From: Haliotis cracherodii | Lineage: Eukaryota | Assembly (NCBI RefSeq): GCF_022045235.1 | Contig: NW_027266270.1 | Span: 9,424,001-9,488,000, forward strand | Length of the DNA stretch: 64,000 nucleotides | Direction of reading: 5' to 3' | Part shown: positions 1 through 6,456 of the stretch, one piece after another | Numbering within the stretch: the stretch's first letter is position 1 | How the letters are laid out: the number at the start of each line of letters is the position of its first letter | Program-made: the position numbers and the translations under genes | The notes under the pieces: model-generated | Databases searched by the model: none | What the model saw: only the letters and a program-made list of their open reading frames with translations | What the model was told of the DNA's origin: nothing

Positions 1-22
1 ACTGTATCTAATCGCTTTCCCA
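1..22 (+). repeat. 3' end of split direct repeat A1 (truncated by window)
   Basis: ACTGTATCTAATCGCTTTCCCA is identical to 5489-5510, and the two diverge immediately after. Confidence 0.85.
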
Positions 23-40
23 TTTTATGTTTCCTTTGTA

Positions 41-180
41 CCCAGTCGCGAACGTTTCGCCGATTACGCTTTGAATACCATCTATTCCAACACTCGCCGT
101 ATCGCATTTACACAATCGCGACCGTTTCGCCGATTACGCTTTGAATACCATCTATTTCAGCACTCGCCGTATCGCATTTA
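41..180 (+). repeat. 70-bp tandem duplication in the element 5' leader
   Basis: 41-110 and 111-180 are near-identical (CGTTTCGCCGATTACGCTTTGAATACCATCTATT...CACTCGCCGTATCGCATTTA). A degenerate third piece lies near 217-236. Confidence 0.9.
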
Positions 181-258
181 TTCCGCTCTACTCCCGAACT
201 TCACCCTCGGGACAATTTACGCTTGTGGAATACCAACTCACCACCCCGACTTTTCGTG

Positions 259-1404
259 ATGCCTCCCAAGAGAAGAGCAACCGTCAACCACAAGCTTGTG
301 AGGGGAGCCAAGCAGGCCAGGACAACCAGAAGACAAACCCCGGGAGTACACATTGTACAGGAGACAACAGCTGATGGTGAGTCTGCCAATTACGGAAATA
401 TCGAAGGTGGCAACAGAATTAACGTACAATCGGCGCAGCTTGTAAATGCCGCGCAGGTTGCCAACTCGGCTACCCAGGTAAACGAGCAACTGGGAAAAAT
501 ACTCCAGTTGCTGGAACATTCAGCGCCCGGCCCGGTTAGCGCAAACCAACAGGTAAGGCTTGGTTTTAGTTCTCCCGCCATTTCGCCCAACATAGGGAGA
601 ATCCCCGATGCGCACAACGAGGCCGACGGTGACGCGGCCCCAGCCAATCACATCGCTGGATACGGGGATTCCCTTTCCTTCCGTGCGGACGGAATAGACG
701 CGCACGTCAAACAACAGGTGAGGGAAAAAATCTGGCGTGGCGAGTATGTTGACCTCGGCACAATACTACCAAACACCGAGGGAAGTCACGAGGACGGTAC
801 GATTACCATGGCGTATGACTCCTCAGGTAAGGTAATTTTTAAACCAATAAAACAGCAAGCAAAGCGCCTGTCCCTGGCAAGCTGGACTTCAGCTTTCCAC
901 ATTTTCATGTGTACTTACGTTAGTAGGCACTCCGAGGTCCGCACAACCCAGGGGTTGCTGTCCTACATGGAAACCATAAGAACGGCGGCACTTCGATTCG
1001 GGGGGGATGCCTGGTCAACCTACGACCAACAATTCCGACACAGAATGTCAAGGGACCCCTCACGACGCTGGGACAACATCGACGGGGAGTTGTGGCTGAA
1101 GTACATGGTAACACAGCCGGTACTACAACCAGAATCAGGCGGACGGGGCGCAATGACACGCGTACAGGGGGACATCGCCAGTCAGGTATGCTGGGATTTC
1201 AATAAATTTGGCTGTAGCAGGGTCAACTGTAAGTACACTCACAAATGCGGTAAGTGTTGCAAACATTCCCATAGCTCTAGGACCTGCTTTCGAGGGAATG
1301 GGGTCCAACCGACCCCATACAAGCCCAATCAGCCCTTTCCTAACAGAAAACCAGCCGGCAAGGCAGGTAAATTCAATGGCCCCTTCCCCCGTGGATCTCA
1401 ATGA
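259..1404 (+). CDS. gag: Gag-like ORF1 with C-terminal CCCH + CCHC zinc fingers
   Basis: First ATG at 259 (MPPKRR). Motifs KIWRGEYVDL, W..YDQQFR, and CWDFNKFGCSRVNCKYTH-KCGKCCKHSHSSRTC typical of Ngaro/DIRS ORF1. Confidence 0.88.
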   Translation: MPPKRRATVNHKLVRGAKQARTTRRQTPGVHIVQETTADGESANYGNIEGGNRINVQSAQLVNAAQVANSATQVNEQLGKILQLLEHSAPGPVSANQQVRLGFSSPAISPNIGRIPDAHNEADGDAAPANHIAGYGDSLSFRADGIDAHVKQQVREKIWRGEYVDLGTILPNTEGSHEDGTITMAYDSSGKVIFKPIKQQAKRLSLASWTSAFHIFMCTYVSRHSEVRTTQGLLSYMETIRTAALRFGGDAWSTYDQQFRHRMSRDPSRRWDNIDGELWLKYMVTQPVLQPESGGRGAMTRVQGDIASQVCWDFNKFGCSRVNCKYTHKCGKCCKHSHSSRTCFRGNGVQPTPYKPNQPFPNRKPAGKAGKFNGPFPRGSQ

Positions 1405-3010
1405 AATGGCACCCTGGTTACGCCAATATGCTAGGGTCAATTACAGAGATGCAAATTATTTATGGGTAGGTTTTAGCTTTGGCTTTAAGCTCGAGTTCCA
1501 GGGAAGCCGCACGGGTCGCCTGGCACGAAACTTGCGATCAGCCACACACCAAGATACGGCAGGCTACGTGAAACAAAAACTACAAAAGGAAGTCGACCTT
1601 GGCAGGATGGCGGGCCCCTTCAAGGACACCCCCCTAGACAACCTCCAAGTATCCCCAATAGGCCTGGTGCCCAAGAAGCAGCCAGGATATGGTCAGCACC
1701 TGGGTAAGCATGCGGAGGAATTCCGTCTAATTCACCATCTATCCTATCCCAGGGGTAAATCTATAAATGACTCCATAGACACAGAGGCCTGCTCCGTTGT
1801 GTACGCCAGATTTGATGAAGCTACCCAGATGGTGCAACAACTGGGAAAGGGAGCATTACTAGCAAAATTCGACATTCAGTCGGCCTTTAGAATTATACCA
1901 GTCCACCCATCCGATTTCGAGCTGCTAGGCATCAGATTCGAAGGTGAGTTCTATTTCGATAAATGCTTACCATTTGGCTGCTCCATATCTTGCGCCATAT
2001 TTGAAACGTTTAGTACCTTCGTGCAATGGTGCATGCAATCGCATCTTCCAACGTGTCCGGTCATGCATTACCTGGATGACTTCCTAACGGGGGGCACAGC
2101 AGGCACCAGCCACTGCTCAGACAACCTCAACGGATGCGTGAATACACTTGAACAGCTTGGGGTTCCTATTGCGCACGACAAGACGGTGGGCCCCACAACC
2201 AAACTGACATTCCTAGGGCTGGAAATCGACACCATTGCAATGCAGATCAGAATCCCAGAGCCCAAGATCAAGGAGGCAACAAGGGAAATCCAAGACATCC
2301 TGTCAACAGGTAACATCAAGGTCACAAAAAGGGCCCTTCAGTCCCTCATAGGCAAGCTTAACTTTATGTGCAGGGCTATACCAATGGCAAGGGCATTCAG
2401 CCGCAGGCTAATCGATCTGCTTAGCAAAGGTAAGCAACCATTTCACCACATTAGGATTACCAGCTGGGTCAAGGAAGACCTACAAATGTGGTTAACATTT
2501 CTTACGAGTTATAACGGCATTTCAGTGTTTCAGGACCAACTATGGGTGGACAGCGATTTCCTCCAGCTGTTTTCAGACGCAGCGGGTGGCGCCGGCTTTG
2601 GGGCCTACATGCAGGGCAAATGGTTTAACGGCGCATGGCCACCCCGGTGGGTGACGGATGGAACTACACGGGACTTGACGCTCCTGGAGCTGTTCCCCAT
2701 CACACTGGCCATCCAAATCTGGGGCAAGCAACTCGCAAACAAAAAGGTCCTCTTTTACTGCGACACCCAAGCCGTCGTAACAATAATCAACAAGCAGTCA
2801 ACCAAGGCCCCCAGAGTGATGAGCCTACTCCGTCGCCTAATCCTGCAGTGTCTCCGATATAATATTATGTTTAAGGCAAAGTATGTATGTTCCACTGCTA
2901 ACACTATTGCCGATGCTCTCTCGAGGTTTCAGCTCAAACGCTTCCGAGAGGCAGCACCAGCCGCGGACCAGAACCCCACACCTATCCCGTGCAACATATG
3001 GCTGATCTGA
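1208..3010 (+). CDS. pol: Reverse transcriptase / RNase H (pol); in-frame ATGs at 1298, 1376, 1406
   Basis: SPIGLVPKK, FRLIHHLS, KFDIQSAFR, LPFG, YLDDF, FLGLEID; RNase H motifs FSDAAG, ELFPI, YCD, NTIADALSR. Overlaps gag in the +1 frame. Confidence 0.95.
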   Translation: MAVAGSTVSTLTNAVSVANIPIALGPAFEGMGSNRPHTSPISPFLTENQPARQVNSMAPSPVDLNEMAPWLRQYARVNYRDANYLWVGFSFGFKLEFQGSRTGRLARNLRSATHQDTAGYVKQKLQKEVDLGRMAGPFKDTPLDNLQVSPIGLVPKKQPGYGQHLGKHAEEFRLIHHLSYPRGKSINDSIDTEACSVVYARFDEATQMVQQLGKGALLAKFDIQSAFRIIPVHPSDFELLGIRFEGEFYFDKCLPFGCSISCAIFETFSTFVQWCMQSHLPTCPVMHYLDDFLTGGTAGTSHCSDNLNGCVNTLEQLGVPIAHDKTVGPTTKLTFLGLEIDTIAMQIRIPEPKIKEATREIQDILSTGNIKVTKRALQSLIGKLNFMCRAIPMARAFSRRLIDLLSKGKQPFHHIRITSWVKEDLQMWLTFLTSYNGISVFQDQLWVDSDFLQLFSDAAGGAGFGAYMQGKWFNGAWPPRWVTDGTTRDLTLLELFPITLAIQIWGKQLANKKVLFYCDTQAVVTIINKQSTKAPRVMSLLRRLILQCLRYNIMFKAKYVCSTANTIADALSRFQLKRFREAAPAADQNPTPIPCNIWLI

Positions 3011-3921
3011 GGCAGGAAGCCGGCAGACTCCTACAACAATCTCTGTCTACTAATACATGGGCCACTTACCAAACAGGCATCAATGCCTTGCACCAGTTCC
3101 GGTCCGCACACCAGCTACAAGAGGTGTGGCCAGTCCCGCTGGATCAGGTCGTAAACTTTATTGCTTATCTGTCAGTCACTCACCACTCCCCTAACACAGT
3201 CAAGACTTACATTGCAGCGCTGTCTTCACACCACAAATTCCACGGGCTCACCGACTGTACAAACCATTTCCTGATAGGCAAGATTGTAACCGCCTTACAC
3301 AAATCAGCGGGCCGACCAGACACCAGAAAACCGATCACTGCAGATCTGCTGCAGGTAGTAACCAACAATCTGCCTCACGTATGCTCATCAGCATATGAAG
3401 CCAGGCTGTTCAAGGCAGTCTACTGCACAGCCTTCTTCGGTTTCTTTAGGGTTAGCGAACTCGTCCAAACTGGACCCTCAAAAACAGGTTGCGCCATCCA
3501 GAATTTAAGCTTCTCGGGCAACCCCCAGCAGCTTTCAATCCATTTACCACACTCAAAGTCTGATCAGTACAGGATGGGGACAACAGTTACAATGTCACCT
3601 ATACCAGGTAATCCGCTATGTCCGGTAGTCGCCATCAAGCACTACCTGGAGGCGCGCCCCTCCGGCCCACAACATGCATTCGTCCACTTTGACCATTCCC
3701 CCGTTACAAGGTACCAATTCCAGGCACTCCTAAAAAAGGCCTTAGCACACAGCAACATAAACACGGCCTGCTATTCTTCGCACTCCTTCCGCATTGGGGC
3801 AGCCACATCAGCAGCCATGAACGGGGTGCCCGAACACCTCATACAACAATACGGCAGGTGGAAATCAGATTGCTACAATGCTTACATACGCCTACCAACA
3901 AATTCAATGTTGCACAATTAA
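2998..3921 (+). CDS. Tyrosine recombinase (integrase)
   Basis: Catalytic set FFRVSEL (R), SKSDQ (K), HSFRIGAAT (HxxR), GRWKS (W), AYIR (Y). ATG at 2998 overlaps the pol end. Confidence 0.95.
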   Translation: MADLRQEAGRLLQQSLSTNTWATYQTGINALHQFRSAHQLQEVWPVPLDQVVNFIAYLSVTHHSPNTVKTYIAALSSHHKFHGLTDCTNHFLIGKIVTALHKSAGRPDTRKPITADLLQVVTNNLPHVCSSAYEARLFKAVYCTAFFGFFRVSELVQTGPSKTGCAIQNLSFSGNPQQLSIHLPHSKSDQYRMGTTVTMSPIPGNPLCPVVAIKHYLEARPSGPQHAFVHFDHSPVTRYQFQALLKKALAHSNINTACYSSHSFRIGAATSAAMNGVPEHLIQQYGRWKSDCYNAYIRLPTNSMLHN

Positions 3922-4513
3922 ATCAAATAGTCTTTCATGGTACTTACTACACTTCTTATTGTTTACAGTTTGGATGGTGGGATCCAGCTACATGGCCAGG
4001 GCACGGCAGTACTTGCTCCTGAAGGGCACCAGCCCGAACCAACCGAGGATGCTATGGCTGGCACGAGGGGGGATGAGGTGGAAGGAGCTGGACACCATTC
4101 TGGATGCACAGGTCAAGGCGACACGGCGCAGCCCCAGAGCCCTCATCATTCACCTGGGCTCCAACGACCTGTGCTCGGTCAAAGGCAGCCAACTCTACCT
4201 TGACATGGTGGCATCAATCCTTCGGATACAACTCCAGCTTCCTGACACCAAGATCATCGTATCCTCAATGCTGCCCAGGCGCTACTGGCACGATGCCAGG
4301 GATCCACGAAAGATCGAGGGGATGCGGAAGAATATCAACCGCCGACTGACCAACCGAATCAAAGAGCTCGGCGGTACAACAGTGCCACATCCCCAGATCC
4401 TGGCATCTGACAAGACATGGTACGCCTGGGAGGGCGTCCACCTCAGTGACAAAGGACTGTGTGTGTTTACGGACAATTTATTGCATGCCCTGGCGCTCGT
4501 TTTGCGCCAGTAA
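3878..4513 (+). CDS. SGNH/GDSL-type hydrolase ORF; domain proper begins about 3968 and is probably reached by splicing
   Basis: Blocks VWMVGSS, RGG, IIHLGSNDL, EGVHLS. An SGNH ORF after YR is known from some Ngaro elements. Confidence 0.85.
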   Translation: MLTYAYQQIQCCTIKSNSLSWYLLHFLLFTVWMVGSSYMARARQYLLLKGTSPNQPRMLWLARGGMRWKELDTILDAQVKATRRSPRALIIHLGSNDLCSVKGSQLYLDMVASILRIQLQLPDTKIIVSSMLPRRYWHDARDPRKIEGMRKNINRRLTNRIKELGGTTVPHPQILASDKTWYAWEGVHLSDKGLCVFTDNLLHALALVLRQ

Positions 4514-4630
4514 GGATATTATCTCCACAGGTTAGTGTTTCCTTTCAGTGCATAAGCAAGCCGGGCAACAATGCTATCTCCGCGTATCGCGTGGCCGTGG
4601 GTGTGGGGTAGCACTCTGGTGCTTTGTGGC

Positions 4631-5279
4631 GGGGTTCTTGTGGGCTACACTGCTAGTAACAAATTAACTTGCTTCCAAATTAATACTCGTGCTTAAGGCT
4701 ACCTGCTTTTCAGCGGGAACCTTTCCGGGGTTACCTGCTTCTCAGTGGGAACCTTGTCTTTCCCGACTTTTCAGCCGGGGAATCGTAGAATAACATACGT
4801 TGGGGCAAACAGTTGCCACGTATATGGGCCCGGCGGCGGAAGTCGTCTTGTCAAGCGGTAGCTGACAGTTGGGTCCGCGGCGGGAGCCGCACAATGGTTT
4901 TGCTAATGGGGCCGGGCAGTGTGATCTGCTTTGGCCGGCTACCTGGGGCCGGGCAGCGGCAGTCTGACTTAGGCCAGCAGCGTGGAGCTGCTTTTGGCAA
5001 CGTGGGAGTTGCCAAGCAATGGTAGCGTTTAAATATGCTACCGTGGGGGCCGGACAGCGGTAGCAGTCTCAGGCCAGCAGCGCTAGCTGCAATCGCCGTC
5101 GGCCACGCGCGTGGCCATGGCAACGGTAGCATTTTTGGTATATACAATTAGCAGCTAAGTAGCCCACTAGTACCTGCACACCCTCGGCCATTTAACCCAA
5201 TCTCATCTTCTGTTTTATTACAGGCACGGGCACCAACGGCTCGGTGGCCCGTGCCTCTCCTTGGCATATCGCAGGATAA
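4631..5279 (+). repeat. Split direct repeat B1 (649 bp)
   Basis: Matches 5808-6456 at offset 1177; only 3 substitutions seen by eye. Confidence 0.95.
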
Positions 5280-5510
5280 TTACATTTAGTACTAACTACT
5301 AAATGACTTTATCGCGCGTATCCAAACCATGGGCTAATTACGTCTGTAACCCAATCACCCCTCGTAACTCAATCACCCCGGGCCACCACTCGGCACCGTG
5401 CCCGGGGAATAATCCCGCGCAAGCATCATCCCGCCCTTTGTTAGTCCGTCATTCGCGAGCAGCCCTTCCCCAAGTACACACGTGTGTCACTGTATCTAAT
5501 CGCTTTCCCA
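5280..5510 (+). repeat. Split direct repeat A2 (about 231 bp), promoter-like
   Basis: Directly follows B1 and its last 22 bp equal window 1-22. Contains CCAATCA (5351), CCCGCCC, TCATTC (Inr-like, about 5449) and the ACACACGTGTGT palindrome (5476-5487). Confidence 0.8.
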
Positions 5511-5634
5511 CCAACCCACCCAGCTTGCCACTCCTTTTTCTTTCCTTTTCAGCCTGACGTGTCCTCTTCACCTGGAATGCTAATCACTTCTTTTCTTCAG
5601 CGTTTATTCTATTACAGGTACCAGCAGAGCGGAT

Positions 5635-5766
5635 TGTATATATGTAAATAAACCTGTACATATGTAAAATAGGTTTTCAGAGCGCTTGTATATATGTACA
5701 TACTTCTAAACGATTCTGATATATGTAATTAAACATGACTTCTTAATAGCTGTATATCTGTACATA
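5635..5766 (+). promoter_or_regulatory. Cluster of six perfect Pumilio response elements (TGTAHATA)
   Basis: Perfect sites at 5635, 5643, 5655, 5687, 5695, 5759; near matches at 5663, 5724, 5751. Confidence 0.7.
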
Positions 5767-5784
5767 TGCAATACCTGTCTCAAC

Positions 5785-5790
5785 AATAAA
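5785..5790 (+). terminator. Candidate polyadenylation signal
   Basis: AATAAA followed about 10-30 nt later by GT-rich GTGTGCGGGGGTTCTTGTGG. Confidence 0.55.
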
Positions 5791-5807
5791 CTATGTCGAG
5801 GTGTGCG

Positions 5808-6456
5808 GGGGTTCTTGTGGGCTACACTGCTAGTAACAAATTAACTTGCTTCCAAATTAATACTCGTGCTTAAGGCTACCTGCTTTTCAGTGGGAACCTT
5901 TCCGGGGTTACCTGCTTCTCAGTGGGAACCTTGTCTTTCCCGACTTTTCAGCCGGGGAATCGTAGAATAACATACGTTGGGGCAAACAGTTGCCACGTAT
6001 ATGGGCCCGGCGGCGGAAGTCGTCTTGTCAAGCGGTAGCTGACAGTTGGGTCCGCGGCGGGAGCCGCACAATGGTTTTGCTAATGGGGCCGGGCAGTGTG
6101 ATCTGCTTTGGCCGGCTACCTGGGGCCGGGCAGCGGCAGTCTGACTTAGGCCAGCAGCGTGGAGCTGATTTTGGCAACGTGGGAGTTGCCAAGCAATGGT
6201 AGCGTTTAAATATGCTACCGTGGGGGCCGGACAGCGGTAGCAGTCTCAGGCCAGCAGCGCTAGCTGCAATCGCCGTCGGCCACGCGCGTGGCCATGGCAA
6301 CGGTAGCATTTTTGGTATATACAATTAGCAGCTAAGTAGCCCACTAGTACCTGCACACCCTCGGCCATTTAACCCAATCTCATCTTCTGTTTTATTACAG
6401 GCACGGGCACCAACGGCTCGGTGGCCCGTGCCTCTCCTTGGCATATCGCGGGATAA
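5808..6456 (+). repeat. Split direct repeat B2, element 3' terminus
   Basis: Copy of B1 ending ...GGATAA; host intron sequence ACACTTATTATTG follows. Confidence 0.95.

What the first reader, a model, noticed from the sequence alone, without database searches (positions are those of the whole stretch)
5635..5790. Retrotransposon-borne cassette of six perfect Pumilio elements (NORAD-like)
Seen: TGTATATA (5635), TGTAAATA (5643), TGTACATA (5655), TGTATATA (5687), TGTACATA (5695) and TGTACATA (5759), plus three near matches, mostly as back-to-back pairs within 132 bp on the sense strand (only one match seen on the other strand), just before AATAAA. The variable position is the N of UGUANAUA, which is what selection for PUM binding would produce rather than simple TA slippage. 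Known: UGUAHAUA is the Pumilio/PUM site, Pumilio-Nanos acts in germline and stem cells, and the lncRNA NORAD sequesters PUM through clustered sites. Inference: the element either places its RNA under Pumilio control or localisation, or encodes a Pumilio decoy. This is the best candidate for an undescribed system in the window.
Basis: partly seen in the sequence, partly recalled or inferred. Interest (0 to 1): 0.85.

Follow-up and report, generated by a model that had tools for sequence, protein, structure and literature searches.

The report
Pumilio-like motif array in abalone retrotransposon
A young abalone Ngaro retrotransposon carries a real, far-above-chance block of Pumilio-type UGUAHAUA motifs just before its poly(A) signal, but the block is a family-specific tandem repeat absent from every relative examined, so a NORAD-like decoy role has no support.

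Summary
All six TGTAHATA octamers, three near matches and AATAAA lie at the stated coordinates on the + strand. Six sites fall in a 291-nt spacer against 0.07 expected (no shuffle of 20,000 exceeded 2).

The host is an abalone, probably Haliotis cracherodii. The element is a 6.67-kb Ngaro: gag-like, RT, tyrosine recombinase and SGNH hydrolase ORFs, with split direct repeats A1...B1-A2-spacer-B2.

The octamers are the conserved 16-nt cores (TGTAYATATGTAMATA) of five degenerate units spaced 20-34 nt apart. They occupy the last 170 nt before an AATAAA that lies 12-17 nt upstream of B2. Two units also contain poly(A) hexamers.

The array is present, with 7-9 perfect sites, in older subfamilies and in contigs from three other organisms.

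It is absent from:
- two sister families, which lack the whole A2-spacer-B2 module;
- a third sister family, which keeps the spacer and AATAAA;
- 58 distant Ngaro loci, including 15 A2-B2 spacers.

Recent substitutions do not avoid the motifs. Transcription could not be shown.

Best reading: a lineage-specific cis-acting 3'-end module, a UGUA-rich upstream enhancer of polyadenylation. It would also bind host Pumilio. A decoy role is unsupported.

The parts
1..22 (+). 3' end of repeat A1 (231 nt; it begins 209 nt before the window, L031 3792-4022)
   Evidence: Identical to A2 at 5280-5510.
223..1404 (+). ORF1, gag-like by position (no Pfam match)
1208..3010 (+). ORF2, reverse transcriptase
   Evidence: Pfam RVT_1, E = 1.1e-14.
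2989..3921 (+). ORF3, tyrosine recombinase
   Evidence: Pfam Phage_integrase, E = 4.2e-8, plus SAM-like N-domain. 99% identical to an NCBI Haliotis cracherodii 'xerD homolog'.
3878..4513 (+). ORF4, GDSL/SGNH hydrolase
   Evidence: Pfam Lipase_GDSL_2, E = 1e-7. Such an ORF after the recombinase is described for amphibian Ngaro elements (PMC9210276).
4625..5279 (+). Repeat B1 (weaker similarity from 4613); abuts A2
   Evidence: Ungapped identity to 5802-6456.
5280..5510 (+). Repeat A2
   Evidence: 100% identical to A1.
5511..5801 (+). Unique A2-B2 spacer: C/A-rich CCCACC start, pyrimidine-rich first half, octamer array and poly(A) hexamers in the second half
   Evidence: No ORF. Fold no more stable than shuffles, z = 0.18. 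No Rfam family.
5635..5766 (+). Five-unit degenerate tandem array (units start at 5635, 5655, 5687, 5717, 5751), each with a 16-nt core of two back-to-back UGUAHAUA-type octamers; 6 perfect, 3 near, and one 7-nt half-site (TGATATA, 5717)
   Evidence: Mean identity 85% between cores and 47% between inter-core segments.
5647..5652 (+). AATAAA hexamer inside unit 1 (TGTAAATAAAC)
5728..5733 (+). ATTAAA hexamer inside unit 4; other subfamilies and species read TGTAAATAAAC there, giving AATAAA
5785..5790 (+). Terminal AATAAA, 12-17 nt upstream of B2
   Evidence: Sister family F5 has AATAAA 18 nt before its B2.
5800..5825 (+). G/U-rich stretch at the start of B2 (GGTGTGCGGGGGTTCTTGTGGG), a candidate downstream element of the poly(A) site
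   Evidence: Read directly. Its role is an inference.
5802..6456 (+). Repeat B2; the element ends at 6456
   Evidence: Most of the 30 copies examined lose similarity at 6456 (+-5 nt); a few are truncated or rearranged within B2.

Best explanation
The octamer cluster is the conserved core of a lineage-specific, five-unit tandem repeat. It forms the last ~170 nt of the unique A2-B2 spacer of one young Haliotis Ngaro family.

Proposed mechanism:
- The element's RNA is expected to run from A1 through the ORFs, B1 and A2 into this spacer.
- It is expected to be cleaved and polyadenylated just after the AATAAA that lies 12-17 nt before B2. The RNA would then end with only a few bases of B, and B1-A2 could template regeneration of the ends. 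This is an inference from the accepted split-direct-repeat logic.
- The array most likely works in cis on that RNA as an upstream efficiency module for 3'-end formation. It offers nine UGUA motifs (the CFIm site) and UA-rich cores, two extra poly(A) hexamers inside units 1 and 4, the terminal AAUAAA, and a G/U-rich stretch at the start of B2.
- This signal must sit in the unique spacer. The same B sequence at B1 has no hexamer upstream and must be read through.

Once in the cytoplasm, the same RNA would carry 6-9 perfect UGUAHAUA sites and would almost certainly be bound by the host's conserved Pumilio. I treat that as a probable secondary consequence, or a co-opted layer of control, and not as the demonstrated reason for the array.

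Shown here: the anatomy, the enrichment, the strand bias, the family restriction, and the conserved AATAAA position in F5. Inferred: transcription, the cleavage site, and CFIm or Pumilio binding.
For: Position and composition:
- The array lies 25-150 nt upstream of the terminal AATAAA on the coding strand.
- TGTA occurs 9 times against 2.4-3.1 expected, P = 1e-4.
- AATAAA (5647) and ATTAAA (5728; AATAAA in other subfamilies) lie inside units 1 and 4.
- Apart from two hexamers inside units of the array itself (5647, 5728), 5785 is the only hexamer between the ORF4 stop and the element end. None precedes B1.

Comparative:
- Sister family F5 (recombinase 52-54% identical to the two query proteins P0002 and P0004; its identity to the window's own recombinase was not measured) has the same layout: AATAAA 18 nt before B2, an AT-rich patch with one TGTA in the homologous place, and a homologous CCCACC...CTTGCC spacer start.

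Literature:
- UGUA upstream of poly(A) signals acts through CFIm (PMC2874999).

Other:
- The spacer has no coding potential, no Rfam match and no excess secondary structure, which fits a platform for single-strand-binding proteins.
- Cores are kept at 85% identity while inter-core segments are at 47%, which suggests a past constraint on the core.
Against: - No transcript evidence. No run is on record as RNA, and the Logan contigs break at repeat borders and show neither ends nor strand.
- CFIm needs only UGUA, so it does not explain why the AUA of each octamer is also kept.
- Hexamers inside the array would cause cleavage before B2, which does not fit the replication logic.
- Active sister families F2 and F3 manage without any such module or AATAAA.
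- Distant Ngaro spacers have no hexamer before B2, so the architecture can be generalised only within abalone.
- Recent substitutions show no purifying selection on the motifs.
Confidence: 0.4

Rival explanations
1. Pumilio control of the element's own RNA in cis. The array evolved as, or is maintained as, a dense set of Pumilio response elements in the 3' UTR. Host Pumilio, with Nanos and CCR4-NOT, would then repress, store or localise the element's mRNA/genomic RNA, for example restricting expression to particular germline or embryonic stages.
For: - Six perfect UGUAHAUA sites in the window, and 7-9 in other subfamilies and in contigs of three other organisms, all on the sense strand.
- Both halves of the 16-nt core fit the octamer, and variation sits mainly at the N position (5763 C/T; A, C or T among units).
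- The host has a classical Pumilio gene at G000:C1:24.22-24.23 Mb. One of its exons aligns almost identically (about 90% by my count) to human PUM1 repeats 5-6.
- PRE number and clustering in 3' UTRs are analysed in relation to Pumilio repression in Drosophila (PMC11182014).
- Transposon-borne PREs in human PLCXD1 are noted in PMC4947167.
Against: - The cluster is absent from every relative outside the family.
- Motif positions are hit by substitutions as often as expected by chance (8 of 22 against 9.6 expected).
- The most recently amplified subfamily, the window's, has lost 2-3 perfect sites.
- Back-to-back octamers with no spacing may not be occupied at the same time. This is my inference.
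- No expression or binding data exist. It is also unclear why a transposon would keep strong repression.
Confidence: 0.3
2. Neutral minisatellite. A short AT-rich, purine-pyrimidine-alternating patch near the poly(A) signal expanded by replication slippage or unequal exchange and hitch-hiked with a successful subfamily. On this reading the match to the Pumilio consensus is coincidental.
For: - The cores are built from TG and TA steps: (TGTA)(NATA)(TGTA)(NATA).
- The double octamer is common genome-wide, mostly as TGTATATATGTATATA, and only 1.3 times its reversed control.
- F5 has only a simple AT-rich patch at the homologous place.
- There is no depletion of substitutions in motif positions.
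- The neighbouring (CCCA)n tract also varies in copy number among copies, so the spacer is prone to slippage.
Against: - Five cores stay 85% alike while the segments between them are at 47%. Whole-unit duplication followed by neutral drift would not give that pattern.
- There is a strict strand asymmetry.
- Every subfamily and species examined retains 6-9 perfect sites.
Confidence: 0.2
3. Transposon-encoded Pumilio decoy (NORAD-like). A2 acts as a promoter, and A2-spacer-B2, or the standalone 1.18-kb A-spacer-B mini units, produce a short polyadenylated RNA with 6-9 PREs from about 100 or more loci. That RNA would titrate Pumilio.
For: - Standalone A-spacer-B units and tandem B-A-spacer-B-A-spacer-B arrays exist (L020, L023, L024, L030; L005, L006, L009).
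- There are at least 123 candidate copies of the spacer.
- Site density is far above that of NORAD, which has 17 sites across the whole transcript (PMC4947167).
- F5's A2 has a TATA-like box and two TGACGTCA sites by eye.
Against: - No RNA evidence of any kind.
- There is no conservation outside one young family.
- Standalone units are equally explained as A1/A2 recombination remnants or as resolution products of a heterodimeric circle.
- Sites are being lost in the youngest subfamily.
- The benefit to the element or the host is unclear.
Confidence: 0.05
4. DNA-level site. The AT-rich, partly palindromic cores (TATGTACATA, TACATATGTA) would serve the tyrosine recombinase or second-strand synthesis on the cDNA or circle.
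For: - There are 10-bp palindromes in units 2 and 3 (read).
- The region is AT-rich and easily melted, at 29% GC.
Against: - The palindromes are not shared by all units.
- Element ends and junctions (B|A), where recombination is expected, lie elsewhere.
- Relatives with the same recombinase family lack the array.
Confidence: 0.05

Closest known systems
Ngaro retrotransposons (DIRS order; e.g. zebrafish DrNgaro1, Xenopus DIRS-53_XT)
   Same: RT and tyrosine recombinase are present, with no methyltransferase domain. An SGNH/GDSL hydrolase ORF follows the recombinase. The split direct repeats have A1 at the 5' end and B1-A2...B2 at the 3' end (PMC9210276, PMC4157794).
   Different: The A2-B2 spacer is long (291 nt, against 76-160 nt in distant Ngaro loci) and holds the octamer array. 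The same genome also has closely related monomeric families without split repeats. The Xenopus study likewise found no split direct repeats in DIRS-54_XT.
NORAD, the mammalian Pumilio-sequestering lncRNA
   Same: Many UGUAHAUA-type sites far above chance, lying in units that arose by tandem duplication (PMC4947167).
   Different: NORAD is a single-copy host gene with ~300-nt units, extra structured motifs and conservation over 100 million years or more. It is abundant in the cytoplasm, with CLIP-proven binding. Here the units are ~32 nt, the sites abut, the sequence is a multi-copy transposon 3' end restricted to one young family, and neither expression nor binding is shown.
CFIm-dependent upstream sequence elements of poly(A) signals (UGUA), including those of retroviruses and pararetroviruses
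   Same: Multiple UGUA motifs within ~150 nt upstream of AAUAAA, followed by a G/U-rich stretch (PMC2874999).
   Different: The regular 16-nt cores and the conservation of the AUA after UGUAN go beyond what CFIm is known to need. No cleavage site has been mapped.
Pumilio-regulated 3' UTRs (hunchback NRE, cyclin B, Drosophila PRE clusters)
   Same: Sense-strand PREs close to the 3' end of a predicted mRNA, in a host with a canonical Pumilio (PMC11182014).
   Different: The density (6-9 sites in 132 nt) and the back-to-back arrangement are far outside ordinary targets, and the carrier is a transposon.
PLCXD1 PREs located in transposable elements (human)
   Same: A precedent that transposons can carry many PREs into transcripts (PMC4947167).
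   Different: Those are scattered transposon insertions in a host gene, not an array inside an autonomous element's own 3' end.

Membership tests
Ngaro (YR retrotransposon) | Reverse transcriptase and tyrosine recombinase ORFs | tested here: met
   RVT_1 E = 1.1e-14; Phage_integrase E = 4.2e-8.
Ngaro (YR retrotransposon) | No DIRS-type methyltransferase domain | tested here: met
   No such Pfam match in any of the four ORFs. Weak or divergent domains could be missed.
Ngaro (YR retrotransposon) | Split direct repeats A1 ... B1-A2 ... B2, with the internal repeats downstream of the recombinase | tested here: met
   A1 = A2 (231 nt, 100%). B1 = B2 (655 nt, about 99%). B1 abuts A2.
NORAD-like Pumilio decoy RNA | PRE density far above chance | tested here: met
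   6 against 0.07-0.23 expected; no shuffle of 20,000 reached 6.
NORAD-like Pumilio decoy RNA | Abundant, stable transcript carrying the sites | tested here: inconclusive
   No run is on record as RNA. The contigs show presence of the sequence only.
NORAD-like Pumilio decoy RNA | Sites conserved in relatives or orthologues | tested here: not met
   The sites are kept within the family in four organisms. They are absent in F2, F3, F5, in the downstream regions of 58 distant Ngaro loci, and in the 15 distant A2-B2 spacers identified. There is no depletion of substitutions in the motifs.
NORAD-like Pumilio decoy RNA | Pumilio binding and an effect on other Pumilio targets | not testable with these tools
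   Needs EMSA or CLIP and perturbation experiments.
Pumilio-regulated 3' UTR | UGUAHAUA on the sense strand of the 3' UTR, and a host PUM with a canonical homology domain | tested here: met
   The motifs are on the coding strand downstream of all ORFs. The host has six PUF-repeat hits at C1:24.22 Mb, and one exon aligns almost identically (about 90% by my count) to PUM1-HD. Transcript inclusion is inferred.
Metazoan poly(A) signal with CFIm upstream element | AAUAAA hexamer, upstream UGUA enrichment, downstream G/U-rich element | tested here: met
   AATAAA at 5785. TGTA 9 against 2.4-3.1 expected, P = 1e-4. G/U-rich 5800-5825 read.
Metazoan poly(A) signal with CFIm upstream element | Cleavage and polyadenylation actually occur there | tested here: inconclusive
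   Unitig contigs end at repeat borders (5810, 5835). No poly(A) loose ends are listed.

The most novel reading that the evidence does not exclude
The 1.18-kb A-spacer-B unit, attached to each full element and also standing alone or in tandem, is a compact Pol II gene. A would be the promoter, the ~290-nt body would carry 6-9 back-to-back Pumilio sites, and its own poly(A) signal would end it. Transcribed from about a hundred or more loci, it would act as a transposon-encoded Pumilio sponge, or as a Pumilio-tethered RNA that helps the element in germ cells. That would be an invertebrate, transposon-borne analogue of NORAD.
Probability: 0.05. Interest if true: 0.85.

Novelty: new variant of a known kind. 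Interest (0 to 1): 0.4.

Why it matters
If the array is functional, it would show how a tyrosine-recombinase retrotransposon builds its 3'-end signal. The biology of these elements is poorly known: their transcripts, ends and host factors are mostly inferred. It would also show that such an element can place its RNA under a deeply conserved germline regulator, Pumilio.

The comparative result matters as a caution. A statistically overwhelming motif cluster can be one amplified 16-mer in one young family. It is not a general property of Ngaro elements.

By-products with their own value:
- Monomer (A-int-B), composite and mini (A-spacer-B) forms coexist in one genome, which bears on the circle and resolution model of these elements.
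- A CCCACC motif at the spacer start is shared by Ngaro families whose recombinases are only about 30% identical.

Tried and rejected
- Conservation among genomic copies: the 30 copies are 93-100% identical, too close to say much. Only subfamily-level differences were usable.
I continued with small pieces.
- RNA evidence: the look-up of sequencing runs found no run on record as RNA. Read laying on four runs gave only Logan unitigs that break at the A and B repeat borders, so they show no ends, strand or poly(A) tails. Depths were not interpretable as copy number or expression.
- RNA structure: the spacer folds no better than shuffles (z = 0.18). There is no Rfam family (one sub-threshold snoRNA hit, E = 0.87).
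- Coding potential of A2-spacer: none.
- The idea that the spacer is a deleted copy of the internal region is rejected, because A1 and A2 diverge immediately after position 22/5510.
- Family F4 (L050) showed no repeats or octamers in the 3.5 kb downstream of its recombinase. Its structure stays unresolved.
- A test for capture of a host 3' UTR was not possible, because the genome search scores only the best candidates, and these are all copies of the family.
The only consensus line is the one DNA alignment printed automatically for the two B repeats of this one copy; it was not used.

Full report
**1. Observation**

- The pattern search finds TGTAHATA on the + strand at 5635, 5643, 5655, 5687, 5695 and 5759.
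- There is one site on the - strand, at 5693-5700.
- The other 15 matches in the window are all on the - strand. Thirteen of them come from an unrelated 4393-bp tandem repeat.
- The near matches are TGTAAAATA (5663), TGTAATTA (5724) and TGTATATC (5751). AATAAA is at 5785-5790.

In 20,000 dinucleotide-preserving shuffles, the 291-nt spacer yields 0.066 sites on average (maximum 2) and the 161-nt core yields 0.23 (maximum 3). The observed count is 6. TGTA alone occurs 9 times against 2.4-3.1 expected (P = 1e-4). The enrichment and the strand bias are real.

The sites are not independent. They are the two halves of a 16-nt core, TGTAYATATGTAMATA, repeated five times at 5635, 5655, 5687, 5717 and 5751, with spacings of 20, 32, 30 and 34 nt. 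Cores are 85% alike on average. The segments between them are 47% alike.

**2. What carries it**

The window is G000:C7:9424001-9488000 of a 1.18-Gb assembly. The recombinase ORF is 99% identical to an NCBI protein of Haliotis cracherodii, and the next relatives are other Haliotis species, Littorina and Ostrea. The host is therefore an abalone.

The ORFs are as follows:

| Coordinates | Product | Evidence |
|---|---|---|
| 223-1404 | gag-like | position only, no Pfam match |
| 1208-3010 | reverse transcriptase | RVT_1 |
| 2989-3921 | tyrosine recombinase | Phage_integrase plus SAM-like N-domain |
| 3878-4513 | hydrolase | GDSL/SGNH |

Fetching 4 kb upstream of the window showed the repeat layout:
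- A1 runs from window -209 to 22 and is identical to A2 (5280-5510).
- B1 (4625-5279, weaker similarity from 4613) equals B2 (5802-6456) and abuts A2.
- Most of the 30 genomic copies examined lose similarity at 6456.

This is the split-direct-repeat layout that defines Ngaro elements, including the SGNH ORF after the recombinase known from amphibian Ngaro elements (PMC4157794; PMC9210276). The octamer array lies in the unique 291-nt spacer between A2 and B2.

**3. The family in this genome**

- There are at least 123 candidate copies of the spacer, and the 40 that were scored are 93-100% identical.
- Most loci are the composite A1-int-B1-A2-spacer-B2.
- Four of 30 (L020, L023, L024, L030) are standalone A-spacer-B units of about 1.18 kb.
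- Three (L005, L006, L009) are tandem B-A-spacer-B-A-spacer-B arrays.
- Older subfamilies carry more perfect sites: 7 in the 97% and 95% types and 9 in a diverged copy at C2:1509050-1509450 (L054).

**4. Other species**

Logan contigs of four runs from four coded organisms hold the spacer at roughly 96-99% identity. Their kind is only guessed as RNA.
- In organisms B, C and D, 5729 T>A and 5758 C>A turn two near matches into perfect sites, giving 8.
- 5763 C>T changes only the N position.
- Organism D has 5697 T>G and 5702 A>G, which break one site.

The shared states indicate that the window's subfamily is derived and has lost two perfect sites, or three if L054 is ancestral at 5666-5668.

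I counted all subfamily and species differences in 5630-5790. Eight of 22 events fall in the 70 constrained octamer positions of 161, against 9.6 expected (binomial P = 0.33). The recent history therefore shows no purifying selection on the octamers. Some of these events are private, post-insertion changes, which are neutral by definition.

**5.

Sister families F2 and F3:
- F2 has a recombinase 67% identical to the window's, and eight of its copies are more than 99% alike. The F3 copies examined are 93-97% alike.
- Both end exactly at the end of a single B copy.
- A full F2 copy runs from an A-like start to that B end, about 5.5 kb. It has no internal repeats, no + strand octamer and no AATAAA in its 3' part.
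- These families lack the A2-spacer-B2 module altogether.

Sister family F5:
- Its recombinase is 52-54% identical to the query proteins P0002 and P0004.
- It has split repeats (B1 681-1074 and B2 1433-1826 of L051).
- AATAAA lies 18 nt before B2, and the spacer start is homologous (CCCACCCACCC...CTTGCC).
- At the place of the array it has only an AT-rich patch with one TGTA and no octamer.

Distant relatives:
- A scan of metagenome contigs with a recombinase alignment gave 80 Ngaro-like loci with 28-49% identity.
- In 58 of them with at least 600 nt downstream of the recombinase (136.5 kb in total) there are 21 sense and 14 antisense octamers, and no cluster larger than 2.
- Fifteen loci with recognisable B1/B2 pairs have A2-B2 spacers of 76-160 nt where measurable, with no octamer and no hexamer before B2.

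Genome-wide, the double octamer occurs 850 times against 632 for the reversed control. That excess is about what copies of this family would supply. The array is thus specific to one young family. It looks like the expansion of a short AT-rich patch near the poly(A) signal.

**6. What it most likely does**

The element's RNA has to read through B1 and A2 and stop at the edge of B2.
- Apart from two hexamers inside units of the array itself (5647, 5728), the AATAAA at 5785 is the only hexamer after the last ORF. It lies 12-17 nt before B2 and is followed by a G/U-rich stretch.
- B1, which has the same downstream sequence, has no hexamer in front of it.
- F5 shares this placement.
- The array lies 25-150 nt upstream of that hexamer, is rich in UGUA (the CFIm site; PMC2874999), and contains AATAAA at 5647 and ATTAAA at 5728 (AATAAA in other subfamilies).
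- The spacer has no ORF, no Rfam match and no excess structure.

I therefore rank a cis-acting 3'-end formation module first (about 0.4).

Pumilio regulation of the element's own RNA comes second (about 0.3). The octamer fit goes beyond what CFIm requires. The host also has a canonical Pumilio: one exon aligns almost identically (about 90% by my count) to human PUM1 repeats 5-6. Any sense transcript would therefore very probably be bound. The two readings are compatible, one acting in the nucleus and one in the cytoplasm.

The remaining readings rank as follows:
- A neutral minisatellite: about 0.2.
- A transposon-encoded decoy: about 0.05.
- A DNA-level site: about 0.05.

**7. Comparison with known systems**

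The carrier is a new member of Ngaro. The array resembles NORAD only in having many PREs in tandemly derived units. It fails the conservation criterion, and its expression and binding are untested (PMC4947167). Transposon-borne PREs have a precedent in human PLCXD1, reported in the same paper. I found no paper describing Pumilio sites in DIRS or Ngaro elements. That is a limited library search, not proof of absence.

**8. Limits**

- The read tools gave contigs only.

**9. Verdict**

The claims of selection for Pumilio binding and of a NORAD-like system are not supported by the comparative data.

Interest is moderate (0.4). This is a real and unusual cis-element array in a poorly understood class of transposon, but it is family-specific and has a mundane leading explanation.

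Noticed in passing
window 5507-5523; L051 ~1315-1332; L094, L099, L114, L119, L120, L123 (first bases after A2): The start of the A2-B2 spacer carries a C/A-rich CCCACC(C/A)ACCC motif. It is present in this family, in sister family F5 and in five unrelated Ngaro families whose recombinases are only about 30% identical. It is the only spacer feature that looks conserved across Ngaro. In this family the (CCCA)n copy number varies from 1 to 6 among copies.
   Followed up: partly
L020, L023, L024, L030 (standalone); L005, L006, L009 (tandem): A-spacer-B units of about 1.18 kb occur on their own and as tandem B-A-spacer-B-A-spacer-B arrays. They could be mini elements, A1/A2 recombination remnants, or resolution products of a two-junction circle.
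   Followed up: partly
L032-L039 with L048/L049 (F2); L040-L047 (F3): Two closely related families with near-identical (F2 >99%, F3 93-97%), apparently recently amplified copies are simple A-int-B monomers of about 5.5 kb. They have no split direct repeats and no AATAAA in their 3' part, so in this clade the split-repeat module is dispensable or replaced.
   Followed up: partly
window 2570, 4707, 4739, 4768, 5546, 5674, 5884, 5916, 5945: TTYTCAG occurs nine times on the + strand of the element and never on the - strand: three per B copy and two in the spacer. Several copies follow pyrimidine tracts and look like splice acceptors.
   Followed up: no
window 9084-61799: A 4392-4394-bp tandem repeat of at least 13 units fills the rest of the window, seen as a periodic TGTATATA on the - strand. 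It has only short ORFs and 33-42% GC.
   Followed up: no
window 39-178: A 70-bp tandem duplication (93% identity) lies in the 5' leader between A1 and ORF1.
   Followed up: no
G000:C67:43037179-43082324: A more distant Ngaro-like family (recombinase 46-47% identical to the query proteins P0002 and P0004) sits in a head-to-tail array of five copies spaced about 9.8-14.7 kb apart (mostly ~9.8 kb).
   Followed up: no
G000:C1:24217713-24230378 (-): The host Pumilio gene shows six PUF-repeat hits over several exons. The exon at 24221604-24221813 aligns almost identically (about 90% by my count) to human PUM1 homology-domain repeats 5-6.
   Followed up: partly
L052 1111-2391: One F5-type copy has a 62-bp satellite array directly after its B repeat and an AATAAA.
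   Followed up: no
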